Of a DNA stretch of 64,000 nt, positions 4,343-16,887 are shown in pieces. The DNA lies in NCBI GenBank assembly GCA_002269645.1, contig NIVC01000409.1:1-64000 (forward strand), given 5' to 3'. How positions within the stretch are numbered: position 1 is the stretch's first letter; each line of letters begins with the position of its first letter. The notes beneath the pieces are model-generated. The model was not told the DNA's origin. It was given only the letters and a program-made list of their open reading frames with translations, and made no database searches. This DNA comes from Macrostomum lignano (lineage: Eukaryota). Both the position numbers and the translations under genes were made by a program.

Positions 4343-5587
4343 ATGGATAATCAAGAATTTCGAATATTTGAGACAAAACTGACGGAAAGAGCAGTCGAAG
4401 AAATTGAAGGACTGATGGAACATGAATGCTTTAGAAATTGTTCAAAGCTAAAACGTAGCGTCGCTTTGATGGTCGTTCTCACCTATGAGCCAAATCAAGA
4501 TAAGCCGTTTTTTCAACTTCACAAGAGGCTTGCAAGCCTGTTTACGTCATTGACCTCAGCACACCAAGGTCAAGAGCCGCGCATATCATTCCGTAGACCT
4601 ATAATCCGGAGAAATCAAGGTCTAATAATAATGGATGAAATGGTGGAACAATGCCTGTGCACTTGGTTGTACGACGACTTGGCCGTGTCAGTAGACATAC
4701 CAAATAACTATAACAAGGGCTTCCAGTCGTCAATGATGTACATGATTGTCGCAGATATTCATCGCTATTTTTCTGCTCGCTTCGAAGACCCGCTCGCAGC
4801 AGTTGAAATTCCTTGCTTTCTCGATACATTTCTTATCAGCAGCGTCAACAATCAAGGGAACTTGGGCGCCTTAGTTGGAGAATACGTCGCCCTAAACGGT
4901 ATATGCTTCGAAAGCCAGCGCCTTGAGGACAACTACAGCTATAGCTGCGAGACGTACAAGTTCGACTTTGCTATCAACGATGGAACACAGGAAACCAAAG
5001 TCTCAGTTAAAAGTGTCAATTTTTCTCCCGTTCAACACTTTGAGAACCCACGAGGCTTTGATCTCTGGGACCCGAATCGAACATGCGACACCGCAAAAAT
5101 GGTGAGAGTTGCAGAGGGCGAAAATGTGCTGCTTCACAGCTGCGACTGTGAGCCTTGCACTCGAGGGCCACTTCAGCGAATCGTCATCAGACAGTCCATG
5201 ATCACTGGCAATGCAGTGTCCTTAGAAACTTTAGAGTGCGAACGCAGGGAAACTTTTGAAAAAGTGATTACCAATTGGTTGCCAAAGGACGCATTCGTGA
5301 GAGATTCGGACTCGAATTCCACCGGATCAGATGAGTCTGACGATGAAGATTCCGACGATGGCGATGAGGATCAGGACAATGGAGATCCCGAATTAGTAGT
5401 CGTCACTTTGGTGGCAGCTAGGATGTTCTTTGAACTACGATACGCTCTCTGTAGCTTTCAGCAGAACAGGTTTAGACATCCGATGCGTTTTAGACTGCGA
5501 GAAAACCTCATCGGCTCCATGGGGCAAATAGGCCCGACTATCAGCTCGATGCCCGGTTTGATAGACAGATCTGCTGCTTTCCAATAA
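4343..5587 (+). CDS. Unknown protein, paralog A of a putative restriction-endonuclease-like (PD-(D/E)XK-type) family
   Basis: 416-codon intact ORF (ATG at 4343 directly after an acceptor-like tttgcag). Collinear similarity to 15583-16887: EIPCFLDTFLISSVNNQGNLGALVGEYVAL / ETYKFDFAI / VSVKSVNF / VLLHSCDCEPC / FELRYAL. Acidic insert near the C-terminus. Confidence is for the coding call; the nuclease label is inference. Confidence 0.85.
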   Translation: MDNQEFRIFETKLTERAVEEIEGLMEHECFRNCSKLKRSVALMVVLTYEPNQDKPFFQLHKRLASLFTSLTSAHQGQEPRISFRRPIIRRNQGLIIMDEMVEQCLCTWLYDDLAVSVDIPNNYNKGFQSSMMYMIVADIHRYFSARFEDPLAAVEIPCFLDTFLISSVNNQGNLGALVGEYVALNGICFESQRLEDNYSYSCETYKFDFAINDGTQETKVSVKSVNFSPVQHFENPRGFDLWDPNRTCDTAKMVRVAEGENVLLHSCDCEPCTRGPLQRIVIRQSMITGNAVSLETLECERRETFEKVITNWLPKDAFVRDSDSNSTGSDESDDEDSDDGDEDQDNGDPELVVVTLVAARMFFELRYALCSFQQNRFRHPMRFRLRENLIGSMGQIGPTISSMPGLIDRSAAFQ

Positions 5588-5890
5588 TTAATAGACACTT
5601 TATGATTTGCTCAGAAGCAAGAACTACAACAAAATCATTCATGAATGTTTTACTGCATCTATATTTATTCATGTAACATCCTACCTAACTATCTTAATAT
5701 TTTTAATAGTGATATTTCACATGTTAAGATTCCATCGAACGTAAGCGCCAAACAACAGATGAACATATTTTTATGTAAATTTAAACACTGTTTTCTAAGA
5801 TGTTTAATCGTATACTGCTACGCTCGTAACACACTTTTTTAGCCATTTGACGGCAGCTTTATCTGCGCTGTCAGTGTAATTTTCTGTATA

Positions 5891-6336
5891 CTATAGCAAG
5901 TTAGCAACTACAAGAACAGATCTAGTGATTAGCAAATCGAAGCTACGTGCTGTCGCAACTGATGCTGTGCTACCGAATTCTAGGAAACTGCTCCGAAACA
6001 TTTTAATAAATTTATGATAAGCACCAAATTTGATTTCGAGGTTTGTTGAAATTTTCCTTTGTTGAGTCAGGCAGTGAAACTCGTGACCCACGATCATCCT
6101 GGCTAAGCAGCTCCAGTGTTAAGGTTCATGACTTCAATTCTGCGTTTGAGCTGATCACATATTAATTTGGCGATTCTTCTTGCTAGGAAATCGGCCGCTG
6201 GATGGTCGTGCGATCCACGCTCGGGAGGGTCAACCCTAGCTAAAAAAGTGCGCTGTGTCAGTTTTATGTTAATCGGAAATGCAAAATCAGGACCGCGTTC
6301 ATTAGCCGTGTTTGTGTCGGGCAGTGAACTGCATAG
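5891..6336 (-). pseudogene. Possible 3' part of a disrupted gene (frameshift near 6100), cut by the 22-bp minisatellite
   Basis: Two adjacent open frames (6336-6103 and 6097-5891) with protein-like composition; no recognisable domain. Confidence 0.3.
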
Positions 6337-14185: not shown

Positions 14186-15582
14186 TTAATGAAGCACTGA
14201 CTGCAACTTATAACAAGCGTGAACATCAATGCGACGGCTGTGCACCTACCTTAATATCTTCTTTCGTCTGACTGAACCGGTACCTAATTTGAAAGATAAA
14301 AATAATGAATTCGATGTTGACTGTTTTGCTCGACAAGTAATCATTTTGCTGGACGTAAGAAAAAAATAAACATGACGGTTGGATGATAAACTTTAAATAC
14401 TTATAGCTAGCTCGTAAATAAGTAGTGAGTCAAGTAGTGCAAGAGTTTGACCAGTTAAGCTGTAGACAAGTAGGACTATCAAATTTATTTAAACTAAATC
14501 AACGCATACTGTTAAAAACAATGAGAAGTTGCTGAAAAAACTTAATAAATTTGTGTCAACACTTGAACCATAAGGAAACTTTGACTCCACGAGATGTTTC
14601 TTAAGACCTATGGATCTCCGTAAATGCTTTTAATGCTGTTGCGCTATAAGCGTGGAATATCAAAAGCGTCAAAATAAAATACCTGAAATGAGCTATAGTT
14701 ACCTTAGGAGTACTCCGCACACTTCTCTGTTTTCCACTTTCCATACCGGCCAATAGTATTTGGAAAACTCCGTAAGTTCAACTGAACTCAAATATTCGTA
14801 GTTGGGCTTGTTCTGAAGCAACTCTTCTAGTTCGGTGATATCCTCCGAGAAGTCGATTGCCAATTTGATAATTTTTTTCAGTATTCTTGCAACCTCCTGA
14901 AATTAATTCATCATTAATAAATCGTCGAATCAAAAAGAAATAGTGCGATTGTTAATTGATCTCAAAAAATGATTACTCACCCCCATTTTTCATGGGGCGT
15001 TATCAGCTTTTGCGCTGTGAATGTTATGGAACGCGCAGTATCTTGGATCTTACTAATGTATGAGAAACATTGGTGACAACTTAACTTGGCAGCTGTGCGA
15101 AAATTTCTACTGAGAAGGCGCTTGTCGGTAGAATTTATGCCCAAAACACAAATTGCTAGGTTGTTATATTTAGTAACAGGTTCAAGTAGTCATAACAATG
15201 ATGCTGCTTCTCAATTTGTTATGCTGTACAGTTGCAACAGAATGGCGCGTTTTATTTTTTATTGCTTATACTTCTATCCTCAATTATTTCTTTTTTAGCC
15301 CCTTTTTTACTAAATTTGTGCAAGCAGAGGTAAAGATTGTGCAGAGCGTCGAGACTGTTACTGAAAGCTTTCAGCTAAGAACAGTGATGTTAATTGCTGT
15401 ATTTAGCACCATAACTCTCTTCTCCAGCAGACTGATGTAAGTTGCACACTAACAGTACAGGCAGATAAAGCCTAACGACCGTACTGAGCTCAGGTATTTA
15501 AATTTTTGCTCTTGCTTGAACAAAGTACGAGCTATTTGTAATACACAAGAGCCTTAATCCAGTAGTCCTCTGAGACTAAACT

Positions 15583-16887
15583 ATGAGTACGGAAAATGAT
15601 TTTCTGCGAATAAAGAGCTCCCTCGAGGAACTCGATCAAGTTGTCCAAGCACTAAGACTCGGCGAAGAATGTAAAGACAAAAAAGAAGAAACTATAAGCG
15701 AAGCCAAACGTTTCGTTACTTCTCTTATACAAGAGGCTCTTGTTGAATTGAAGACAGTACACAGCAATGAAGACTTGAAATATCGACCAAAGTTTATTCA
15801 AGCAGCGGCGCTGGTGATTCTGGCGACGTTCTGTCCAGCTGACACTCTGACTGTCCAGTTGGATGGCTGCCAAAAAGACTCTTCCCGAATACGATTTCTC
15901 GGCGAGCTACTGAGCAGCGCATTCTTACAAATTTCCTGTTGGAGATCGTCTTCACCACCAAATAGAGGACGCATCAGTAGGCCTAGGCTACGTAAACTGC
16001 CAGCTGTGAAAGGTGATGATTCACCAAACTTAATGTGGAGATACTCTGATGTTTCCGCTGAGCTGCCTGACCGCTACAGCTCAAAAATTACCTTAGCGAC
16101 AGCTATGTCTCTGCTATTGACAGAGCTAAGCAAGTCATTTCTAAAATGCCAATTCAAATCGGCGGAAATTCCATGCCTCATCGATCTGTTCAAAATTAGC
16201 AGTGCAAACAATCAGAATCAAATCGGTTCGCTGATTGAAGAGTTTTATGCTCTAGTGAACGTTTGCCTTCACGAGCCGTACACGCATCCGGAGCATTCCG
16301 TGACAAGTGAAACCGTCGCCTACGATTTCTCCATAACAAACCAGAACGGCAAGAAAATACGCTACGTCTCAGTGAAGTCAATCAACTTCAACGACAGACG
16401 GCCTAGAAAAAAACCCGCTTTCTCGTTTCTATCAGGCGAAGATGAGTTGACGGTGCTGTTGCACGACTGCAACTGTCGCGAGTTCTGCGAGCAGCATCCG
16501 ATTTGGAAACTTCAGATCAAACTCAAACCGATACCGGATGATGACGCTCGATCGGTTATCCCGGACGAAGATGGCAAACAAAGGTTAAGCAAACTTCTGG
16601 CCGGGTTTAAGTGCCACCGAAAGAAAGATTTTATGCGAATCCTTAAAGCGGCCAGATGTGGCACAATCTATTTGGTCTCAGGTAAGCTGCTATTCGATCT
16701 GAGATTTGCATTCAGCTCGGGATCTATTCATTCGATCTTATATTGCAAAGAGAAGAGCTGCCTACGCAGGAATTTGAAATGCGCCATTGAAGAAGCATCA
16801 AAGCAGCAGTTTGAAGACGAGGAAGGACAAAATAGTAGTCCTGAGCAGATACCAGCGATAGTTGTAGACAGGGAATCATGCGCTTAA
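15583..16887 (+). CDS. Unknown protein, paralog B of the putative restriction-endonuclease-like family
   Basis: Intact 434-aa ORF; EIPCLIDLFKISSANNQNQIGSLIEEFYAL / ETVAYDFSI / VSVKSINF / VLLHDCNCREFC / FDLRFAF align with 4343-5587. Confidence 0.85.
   Translation: MSTENDFLRIKSSLEELDQVVQALRLGEECKDKKEETISEAKRFVTSLIQEALVELKTVHSNEDLKYRPKFIQAAALVILATFCPADTLTVQLDGCQKDSSRIRFLGELLSSAFLQISCWRSSSPPNRGRISRPRLRKLPAVKGDDSPNLMWRYSDVSAELPDRYSSKITLATAMSLLLTELSKSFLKCQFKSAEIPCLIDLFKISSANNQNQIGSLIEEFYALVNVCLHEPYTHPEHSVTSETVAYDFSITNQNGKKIRYVSVKSINFNDRRPRKKPAFSFLSGEDELTVLLHDCNCREFCEQHPIWKLQIKLKPIPDDDARSVIPDEDGKQRLSKLLAGFKCHRKKDFMRILKAARCGTIYLVSGKLLFDLRFAFSSGSIHSILYCKEKSCLRRNLKCAIEEASKQQFEDEEGQNSSPEQIPAIVVDRESCA

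What the first reader, a model, noticed from the sequence alone, without database searches (positions are those of the whole stretch)
4343..16887. Unknown ~420-aa protein family with a restriction-endonuclease-like catalytic pattern and an HxCxC..C motif (paralogs 4343-5587 and 15583-16887)
Seen: conserved between paralogs are a helix with G-x-L-x2-E (GALVGEY / GSLIEEF), E-T-x3-D-F (ETYKFDFAI / ETVAYDFSI), V-S-V-K-S-x-N-F, then VLLH-x-C-x-C-x2-3-C and F(D/E)LR(Y/F)A. Established: PD-(D/E)XK nucleases use a helical Glu, a strand Asp and (D/E)xK; an SxK variant exists in Cfr10I/NgoMIV-type enzymes. Inference: a metal-dependent nuclease fold with a small Zn site. Both ORFs are intact while many neighbours are broken, which suggests purifying selection.
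Basis: partly seen in the sequence, partly recalled or inferred. Interest (0 to 1): 0.75.

Follow-up and report, generated by a model that had tools for sequence, protein, structure and literature searches.

The report
Flatworm orphan nuclease-like gene family
Two intact genes in this flatworm (Macrostomum lignano) DNA belong to a small protein family found nowhere else, which keeps a restriction-enzyme-like set of residues and four cysteines; nearly every member sits head-to-head with an ankyrin-repeat gene, but whether it has a nuclease fold remains unproven.

Summary
4343-5587(+) and 15583-16887(+) are intact single-exon genes (414 and 434 aa) and are paralogs (26% identity, E=1e-23). The window is Macrostomum lignano contig NIVC01000409.1. 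An exhaustive HMMER scan of 1.84 billion representatives found only M. lignano paralogs, giving six divergent types. There was no Pfam, NCBIfam, PADLOC, PHROG, PDB-sequence or viral-contig match.

E180, D208, S221-V-K223 and C158, H265, C269, C272, C299 are invariant across all types. E203 and C267 are not. The D-x12-S-V-K spacing and the predicted helix-strand-strand-strand order fit a PD-(D/E)xK core with a Cfr10I-like Ser variant. However, the AlphaFold models are poor (pLDDT 58 and 47) and Foldseek gave no significant hit, only many weak hits to such nucleases. The fold is therefore unproven.

The "broken neighbours" are exons of multi-exon ankyrin genes. New finding: in five of six paralog types the gene lies head-to-head, 0.45-1 kb apart, with an ankyrin gene whose first exon encodes a second novel conserved ~350-aa domain. 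This looks like a two-gene module duplicated as a unit. dN/dS between recent copies is uninformative. Long-term constraint is shown by the invariant motifs.

Verdict: a real lineage-specific family, plausibly a nuclease, function unknown. Interest is moderate.

The parts
4343..5587 (+). Family member pA: single-exon CDS, 414 aa (GenBank cluster BOX15_Mlig029929). A splice-acceptor-like ttgcag lies directly before the ATG.
15583..16887 (+). Family member pB: single-exon CDS, 434 aa (GenBank cluster BOX15_Mlig026431). It is the most divergent paralog (24-28% identity to the others).
4880..5011 (+). pA putative catalytic block: E180 (4880-4882) in predicted helix 174-191, D208 (4964-4966) at the start of predicted strand 208-212, and S221-V-K223 (5003-5011) in predicted strand 217-225.
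16240..16377 (+). pB equivalents: E220 (16240-16242), D248 (16324-16326), S263-V-K265 (16369-16377).
4814..5239 (+). pA invariant Cys/His set: C158 in EIPC (4814-4816), H265-x-C267-x-C269-x2-C272 (5135-5158) and C299 (5237-5239). C267 is not invariant in the family.
16174..16614 (+). pB invariant Cys/His set: C198 (16174-16176), H294...C302 (16462-16488), C344 (16612-16614).
1..3597 (-). Head-to-head partner gene of pA, cut by the window start. Its first exon (2543-3597) encodes a novel conserved ~350-aa domain, called PND here. A 35-nt GT-AG intron (2508-2542) joins it to the ankyrin-repeat exons (1667-2507, 931-1482 and beyond).
3598..4342 (.). A 745-bp divergent intergenic region between the partner gene and pA, presumed to be a shared promoter region. 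The equivalent gaps at other paralog loci are about 0.45-1.0 kb.
8823..14992 (-). Head-to-head ankyrin-repeat partner gene of pB. It is called as 913 aa over 8823-14024 here. A 1036-aa model on a sister contig starts about 590 bp upstream of pB, which corresponds to about 14992 in the window. It has ankyrin repeats but no detectable PND.

Best explanation
pA and pB belong to a Macrostomum-restricted protein family of at least six divergent paralog types.

Proposed architecture (inferred):
- an N-terminal helical region of about 145 aa;
- a core whose helix-strand-strand-strand order carries an invariant Glu (helix), an invariant Asp (start of strand 2) and an invariant Ser-Val-Lys (strand 3), which reads as a PD-(D/E)xK-type metal-dependent phosphodiesterase site in the Ser variant known from Cfr10I and NgoMIV;
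- one invariant Cys before the core and His plus three invariant Cys after it, which would bind a structural metal (Zn, or an Fe-S cluster as in 'iron-staple' nucleases) that ties the two sides of the core together.

Proposed partnership (inferred): the protein works with the product of the divergently transcribed neighbour, a novel N-terminal domain (PND) fused to ankyrin repeats. The pair has been duplicated and has diverged as a unit.

Shown here: paralogy, lineage restriction, the invariant residues, the gene pairing, and RNA-based gene models. Inferred: the fold, metal binding, nuclease chemistry and functional coupling.
For: - Paralogy: E=1e-23.
- Lineage restriction: only M. lignano relatives among 1.84e9 representatives.
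- Invariant residues: 27 invariant columns include E180, D208, S221-V-K223, C158, H265, C269, C272 and C299.
- Motif spacing: D-x12-S-V-K fits the PD-x9-18-(E/D)-h-K rule, and Ser at the acidic position occurs in Cfr10I and NgoMIV (PMC2532715).
- Secondary structure: both AlphaFold2 models place these residues on the expected helix, strand 2 and strand 3.
- Weak fold signal: about 20 of the top 50 Foldseek PDB hits of the better model are PD-(D/E)xK-fold nucleases by my reading of their names (LmuA, HamA, Hjc, XisH, McrC, tRNA-splicing endonuclease, Bax1). All have E>=0.6. A few similar names appear in BFVD.
- Cysteine arrangement: one Cys upstream plus three downstream of a nuclease core is how Cas4/AddB bind Fe-S, or Zn in DUF3799 (PMC3466216).
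- Pairing: a divergent ankyrin gene lies upstream in every locus. PND is its first exon in five of six paralog types. X and PND show similar divergence and share the same closest pair.
- Expression: the GenBank models derive from an RNA-seq-guided transcriptome with repeat-overlapping transcripts removed (PMC5730564).
- Recent replacements: by inspection of the variant protein sequences, replacements between recent copies avoid the 27 invariant columns apart from one conservative change, L356 to F in P0009. This was not checked by a script.
Against: - Model confidence is low (mean pLDDT 58.5 and 46.6; pTM 0.50 and 0.40) and only 6-7 sequences fed the prediction.
- No Foldseek hit reached E<0.3. 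The second model hit only helical bundles.
- No match to any Pfam, NCBIfam, PADLOC or PHROG profile or any PDB sequence, including the many PD-(D/E)xK families.
- hhalign against lambda Exo and the RecB nuclease domain is noise.
- The canonical acidic residue is Ser, and no compensating acid could be placed without coordinates.
- E203 is not conserved.
- pB's partner lacks PND.
- dN/dS between recent copies is not clearly below 1 for pB (0.7-1.4) or P0004 (0.68), on very few substitutions.
Confidence: 0.35

Rival explanations
1. The family is a non-enzymatic, metal-stabilised binding or adaptor protein with a fold of its own. The conserved Glu, Asp, Ser-x-Lys and Cys/His residues serve structure or ligand binding, and the likeness to a nuclease motif is coincidental.
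For: - No profile, sequence or significant fold match to any nuclease.
- The acidic residue of the motif is missing.
- Many other invariant residues lie outside the putative site and are unexplained by a nuclease model: R85-P-x2-R89, P120, Y123, F143, S166, N169, F227 and P276.
- One local Foldseek hit is to a PHD zinc finger (rank 11).
Against: - The three motif elements are all invariant.
- They are correctly ordered, correctly spaced, and sit on the expected predicted secondary-structure elements.
- Weak Foldseek hits are dominated by one fold class.
Confidence: 0.35
2. The family is a highly divergent RecB/Cas4/AddB-type 'iron-staple' nuclease. The four invariant cysteines (C158, C269, C272, C299) hold a [4Fe-4S] or Zn centre that clamps the N- and C-terminal sides of the nuclease core.
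For: - There are exactly four invariant Cys, one before and three after the core, including a C-x2-C pair. This is the same layout as in Cas4/AddB/DUF3799 (PMC3466216).
- The motif V-S-V-K-S resembles the h-(D/E)-h-K-(S/T) strand of RecB-like enzymes (own knowledge).
- A Cas4-annotated phage protein is among the weak BFVD hits (rank 34).
Against: - No invariant Gln or Tyr that could form a QhxxY motif.
- The last Cys is 26 residues after C-x2-C, not about 5 (the ~5-residue spacing in Cas4/AddB is from my own knowledge).
- hhalign to the E. coli RecB nuclease domain and lambda Exo gives probabilities below 1%.
- No Pfam Cas4/PDDEXK hits.
Confidence: 0.08
3. The genes are remnants or domesticated genes of a mobile element or a virus that entered the flatworm genome.
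For: - The family is lineage-restricted and multi-copy.
- One locus carries an inverted duplicate about 9 kb away.
- The genome is repeat-rich (PMC5730564).
- A decayed LINE-type fragment lies about 2 kb downstream of pB.
Against: - No relative in IMG/VR contigs, in BFVD at significant level, or among 15 billion proteins from genomes and metagenomes.
- Paralogs are old (24-54% identity) rather than a young burst.
- The near-identical copies are explained by the known chromosome duplication of the sequenced line.
- Each gene is paired with a spliced host-type ankyrin gene.
- The GenBank annotation excluded transcripts overlapping repeats.
- No transposase, integrase or capsid gene is nearby.
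Confidence: 0.05

Closest known systems
Cfr10I / NgoMIV / Bse634I / SgrAI-type PD-(D/E)xK restriction endonucleases (Ser or Ala in place of the second acidic residue)
   Same: An invariant Asp followed by Ser-Val-Lys on the next predicted strand. Ser at the (E/D) position is documented for Cfr10I and NgoMIV (PMC2532715). An invariant Glu sits on the preceding helix.
   Different: - No sequence or profile similarity.
- The Asp-Lys spacing is 14 residues here against 55 in Cfr10I.
- No compensating Glu 13 residues after the Lys.
- Eukaryotic, about 420 aa, with an N-terminal helical region and a Cys/His cluster.
- Fold unverified.
Small and effector PD-(D/E)xK nucleases: archaeal Hjc resolvases, Lamassu LmuA (Cap4-type), Hachiman HamA, XisH, McrC
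   Same: They are the commonest class among the weak Foldseek matches of the better model, and they share the alpha-beta-beta-beta order of the conserved residues.
   Different: - All matches have E>=0.6, TM<=0.2 on the query and probability <=0.16.
- No PADLOC, Pfam or PDB sequence hit.
- Those families keep (D/E)xK.
Iron-staple RecB-like nucleases (Cas4, AddB, Dna2, Exo5, DUF3799)
   Same: Four conserved cysteines, one upstream and three downstream of the nuclease core, bind Fe-S or Zn (PMC3466216). The family has exactly four invariant Cys in that layout.
   Different: - No QhxxY motif.
- Different spacing of the last Cys.
- An invariant His next to the Cys pair.
- hhalign to RecB and lambda Exo is at noise level.
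Animal proteins that combine ankyrin repeats with a nuclease on one chain (RNase L; ANKLE1/LEM-3). Own knowledge, not tested here.
   Same: Ankyrin repeats associated with a nuclease-type module.
   Different: - Here the two parts are separate, divergently transcribed genes.
- The nuclease classes differ (KEN domain, GIY-YIG).
- The ankyrin partner carries an additional novel N-terminal domain.

Membership tests
PD-(D/E)xK nuclease superfamily | Alpha-beta-beta-beta-alpha-beta core fold | tested here: inconclusive
   Predicted secondary structure has the right order (H174-191, E199-202, E208-212, E217-225, then E259-265, H270-274, E277-283). However, pLDDT is 58.5 and 46.6, no Foldseek hit has E<0.3, and no coordinates were available.
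PD-(D/E)xK nuclease superfamily | Conserved Asp at the start of strand 2 | tested here: met
   D208 (pA) / D248 (pB) is invariant in six paralog types plus an extra copy, and lies at the first residue of predicted strand 208-212.
PD-(D/E)xK nuclease superfamily | (D/E)-x-K on strand 3, 9-18 residues after the Asp | tested here: not met
   The Lys is invariant and the spacing fits (D-x12-S-V-K), but the acidic residue is an invariant Ser. Ser occurs at this position in Cfr10I and NgoMIV (PMC2532715), so the canonical motif fails and only the variant form is met.
PD-(D/E)xK nuclease superfamily | Profile or sequence match to a member family | tested here: not met
   No hit in Pfam, NCBIfam, PADLOC, PHROGs or PDB sequences at permissive thresholds.
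PD-(D/E)xK nuclease superfamily | Metal-dependent phosphodiester cleavage | not testable with these tools
   No biochemical data exist. No paper mentions these gene ids.
Iron-staple RecB/Cas4/AddB nucleases | Four conserved Cys, one N-terminal and three C-terminal of the core | tested here: inconclusive
   C158, C269, C272 and C299 are the only invariant Cys and have that layout. The spacing after C-x2-C is 26 residues rather than about 5, and their proximity in space is unknown.
Iron-staple RecB/Cas4/AddB nucleases | RecB motifs, including QhxxY after motif III | tested here: not met
   No invariant Gln, and the only invariant Tyr (Y123) lies upstream of the core. hhalign to RecB and lambda Exo gives below 1% probability.
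Known zinc-finger families (SWIM, PHD, other Pfam Zn modules) | Match to the family profile | tested here: not met
   No Pfam hit for any of six members. C-x-H after the distal Cys occurs in pB only.
Ankyrin-repeat proteins (partner genes only) | Pfam Ank repeats above threshold | tested here: met
   Ank_2 E=3e-21 (1667-2524), 4e-26 (11086-11601) and 4e-14 (12460-12921). The called partner genes at all other loci carry Ank families.

The most novel reading that the evidence does not exclude
The family gene and its PND-ankyrin neighbour form a flatworm-specific two-component system that has diversified into at least five or six pairs. One possibility is a nuclease effector held or aimed by an ankyrin sensor or inhibitor, used in genome or pathogen defence. 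Another is a selfish linked toxin-antidote-like pair. On either reading this would be a kind of animal gene module not described before, built from two domains with no known relatives.
Probability: 0.12. Interest if true: 0.75.

Novelty: new variant of a known kind. Interest (0 to 1): 0.45.

Why it matters
M. lignano is a laboratory model for stem cells, regeneration and sexual selection, and a large share of its genes have no annotation. This analysis defines one such family precisely: its members, invariant residues and likely domain limits. It also gives a concrete structural hypothesis that can be checked.

The analysis further shows that the family is tied to a second unknown domain, fused to ankyrin repeats, in a head-to-head pair that was copied repeatedly. 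Conserved divergent gene pairs that survive to about 25-30% protein identity are uncommon in animals and usually signal shared regulation or physical partnership. If the nuclease reading holds, this would add a eukaryotic, lineage-specific branch, with a Ser variant and a Cys4 metal clamp, to a superfamily best known from prokaryotic defence and repair.

Tried and rejected
1. The word-indexed protein search with each paralog and with the six-sequence alignment returned only the window's own proteins and one paralog. The alignment search was swamped by the repeat insert of P0005.
2. Pfam, NCBIfam, PADLOC and PHROGs gave nothing. The only entries were artefacts of low-complexity or repeat segments: CENP-B_dimeris on the acidic tract of pA, and TmtA in one unnamed member (E=0.006).
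3. PDB sequence searches with the two-sequence, six-sequence and core-only profiles gave only chance hits: glucagon receptor, globin and an S-layer protein.
4. Foldseek of the second model (pB, pLDDT 46.6) returned only helical bundles and says nothing about the core.
5. I tried to build comparator alignments for profile-profile tests. The search for related loci with lambda Exo returned only 98-100% identical copies, so no useful profile could be made. Single-sequence hhalign against lambda Exo and the RecB nuclease domain was noise.
6. hhalign of the family against PND gave 0.3% probability, so the two novel domains are unrelated.
7. A scan of IMG/VR contigs with the core alignment found no relative.
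8. Gene ids were searched in the full text of the library and in the supplements of three M. lignano papers, with no mention.
9. The reading 'neighbours are broken genes' was rejected. They are exons joined by short GT-AG introns.
10. Viral or mobile-element origin was considered and ranked low (see rivals).

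
Full report
**Source and context.** The 434-aa protein encoded at 15583-16887 is found on one public contig, NIVC01000409.1 of assembly GCA_002269645.1. The window is bases 1-64000 of that record. The accession prefix belongs to the Mlig_3_7 assembly of the free-living flatworm Macrostomum lignano. The rest of the window carries ordinary animal genes: Pecanex exons (Pecanex_C, E=1e-81), an IPP-transferase exon with a C2H2 finger, poly-Q-rich exons and many mini- and microsatellites. 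This is host chromosomal DNA, not a prokaryotic or viral genome.

**The observation.** Both ORFs are present and intact at the stated coordinates, and every quoted motif is there. The two proteins align over about 300 residues at 26% identity, E=1e-23. There is no third copy in the window.

**How far the family extends.**
- Word-indexed searches found only the window's proteins and one paralog.
- The exhaustive HMMER scan used a two-sequence profile against 1.84 billion representatives of about 15 billion proteins. It gave five real hits: pB itself and four further paralog types, P0003 to P0006 (pA does not appear as its own row). All are 'hypothetical protein' entries of M. lignano. It also gave two repeat artefacts.
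- A scan of IMG/VR contigs found nothing.
- With pA and pB there are six paralog types at 24-54% identity, plus an inverted near-duplicate of one of them.
- The family is therefore real, old enough to have diverged deeply, and so far seen in this species only. Other Macrostomum species are poorly represented in the protein collections, so 'genus-restricted' is the safe wording.

**What is conserved.** In the six-sequence alignment 27 columns are invariant. They include:
- E180;
- D208;
- S221-V222-K223;
- E155-I-P-C158;
- H265, C269, C272 and P276;
- C299.

The extra copy keeps all of these. E203 of 'E-T-x3-D-F' is not conserved, and C267 is Trp in P0006. The only invariant cysteines in the protein are therefore one upstream and three downstream of the putative core.

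**The nuclease hypothesis.**
- The motif D-x12-S-V-K fits the PD-x9-18-(E/D)-h-K rule, except that Ser replaces the acid. That replacement is documented in Cfr10I and NgoMIV (PMC2532715).
- AlphaFold2 with the six- and seven-sequence alignments gave poor models (mean pLDDT 58.5 and 46.6).
- Both models place E180 on a helix, D208 at the start of the second following strand, and S-V-K in the third. This is the order expected for this fold.
- Foldseek against the PDB gave no significant match (best E=0.6).
- About 20 of the 50 listed weak hits are PD-(D/E)xK-fold nucleases by my reading of their names: LmuA, HamA, Hjc, XisH, McrC, tRNA-splicing endonuclease and Bax1.
- BFVD gave a few hits of the same kind. 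The poorer model hit only helical bundles, which probably reflects the N-terminal region.
- No Pfam, NCBIfam, PADLOC, PHROG or PDB-sequence match exists at permissive thresholds.
- hhalign to lambda Exo and the RecB nuclease domain, both taken by accession, is noise.

The hypothesis survives its sequence test, gets weak structural encouragement and remains unproven.

**The metal site.** The layout of one Cys before and three after the core recalls the 'iron staple' of Cas4, AddB, Dna2 and Exo5, where the ligands hold Fe-S, or Zn in DUF3799 (PMC3466216). The family has no QhxxY motif and its spacing differs, so this is a resemblance and not membership. A local His/Cys zinc knuckle is the alternative. 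One weak local Foldseek hit to a PHD finger points that way.

**The neighbours.** The ORFs around the two genes are not broken genes.
- They are exons of ankyrin-repeat genes on the opposite strand.
- For pA's neighbour, the 352-codon ORF at 2539-3597 is joined to the next ankyrin ORF by a 35-nt GT-AG intron that removes the stop.
- That first exon encodes a second domain without any Pfam or PDB relative.
- The same domain, called PND here, is the first exon of the divergent ankyrin gene upstream of P0003, P0004, P0005 and P0006. These lie on four other contigs at 24-62% identity.
- The gap between the two start codons is 0.45-1.0 kb at every locus.
- pB also has a head-to-head ankyrin gene, but no PND is detectable in it.
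- X and PND have diverged to similar degrees, and the closest pair is the same for both.
- The simplest reading is a two-gene module that duplicated as a unit. The short shared upstream region suggests co-regulation. Physical or functional coupling is inferred, not shown.

**Selection and expression.**
- The locus occurs on four contigs at about 97-99% identity. This fits the known large-scale duplication in the sequenced DV1 line (PMC5730564).
- Against the 99%-identical copy, the two coding regions differ at 0.08% of sites, and non-ORF DNA at 0.90%.
- Nei-Gojobori estimates against the more distant copies rest on very few changes:

| Comparison | omega | synonymous / non-synonymous changes |
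|---|---|---|
| pA | 0.27 | 8 / 8 |
| pB | 0.7-1.4 | 1-2 / 5 |
| P0004 | 0.68 | 4 / 10 |

- These values are uninformative, and relaxed constraint on redundant copies is possible.
- One sister copy of pB has one 2-base indel and is modelled as 340 aa. One sister copy of the PND exon has one 1-base indel. Either could be an assembly error.
- Long-term constraint is shown better by the invariant residues that persist at about 25% identity.
- The GenBank gene models come from an RNA-seq-guided transcriptome from which repeat-overlapping and non-coding transcripts were removed. The genes are therefore transcribed.
- No paper or searchable supplement mentions them.

**Verdict.** The family is a real, uncharacterised, lineage-restricted protein family.
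- Most likely mechanism (confidence about 0.35): a divergent PD-(D/E)xK-type metal-dependent nuclease core in the Ser variant, clamped by a Cys4(His) metal centre, working with a PND-ankyrin partner.
- An equally weighted rival is a non-catalytic metal-stabilised protein of unknown fold.
- Viral or mobile origin is unlikely on present evidence.
- The finding is moderately interesting. The nuclease idea is plausible but unverified, and the conserved gene pairing with a second novel domain is the most useful new result.

Noticed in passing
window 2543-3597 (-); also L002 8391-9446, L006 8284-9366, L007 8378-9451, L008 8007-9035 (all -): A second novel conserved domain of about 350 aa (PND) forms the N-terminus of the ankyrin partner genes. 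Conserved blocks read LYDLCRF, FLxSAFVFCHLxRVPG, YLCILFNELxTCxWYL, RLPNHD and VPCR. Invariant residues include C113, H167, C235, N239, C334 and C339. There is no Pfam or PDB sequence match.
   Followed up: partly
window 2508-2542 (-): A very short (35-nt) GT-AG intron contains the stop codon that ends the PND ORF and joins it in frame to the ankyrin exons. Reading raw ORFs in this genome makes spliced genes look broken.
   Followed up: yes
window 6394-7800: A 22-bp-period minisatellite lies between pA and the next gene. Its length differs between the sister contigs, and it produces several spurious 116-aa ORFs.
   Followed up: partly
L007 10001-11920 (+) and 20586-21920 (-): Paralog P0005 carries a long tandem-repeat insert (unit about 15 aa, SEHTVEPHEEQSQQQ-like) between the N-terminal helical part and the core. 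This marks a tolerant linker. A near-identical inverted copy of the gene lies about 9 kb away, tail to tail.
   Followed up: partly
sister contigs: L003 (NIVC01004103.1) and L004 (NIVC01002397.1): One sister copy of pB has a single 2-base indel and is annotated as a 340-aa product. One sister copy of the PND exon has a single 1-base indel. Whether these are real or assembly errors is unknown.
   Followed up: partly
window 21337-24063 and 29356-32463 (-): Large exons of a Pecanex homologue (Pecanex_C, E=1e-81), with poly-Q tracts and an in-frame minisatellite at the upstream end of the ORF.
   Followed up: partly
window 35073-35927 (-): An exon encoding the C-terminal part of a tRNA isopentenyltransferase (IPPT, E=4e-18) with a C2H2/matrin-type zinc finger.
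   Followed up: partly
window about 18835-19504 (+): Short ORFs with non-LTR-retrotransposon reverse-transcriptase-like wording (e.g. YLGVTL) about 2 kb downstream of pB. There was no Pfam hit at E<=0.01. It looks like a decayed fragment. The DNA just downstream of pB also aligns poorly with one sister contig.
   Followed up: no
window 26641-27845, 39486-41205, 48987-49878, 54959-57205, 58995-60009, 60568-61107: Long ORFs on both strands that are artefacts of tandem repeats (for example CLSV repeats and IIKSS repeats), not genes.
   Followed up: no
window 4337-4342: A polypyrimidine tract and ttgcag lie directly before the pA start codon. This looks like a 3' splice or spliced-leader acceptor site, and M. 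lignano trans-splices about 39% of its genes (PMC5730564).
   Followed up: no
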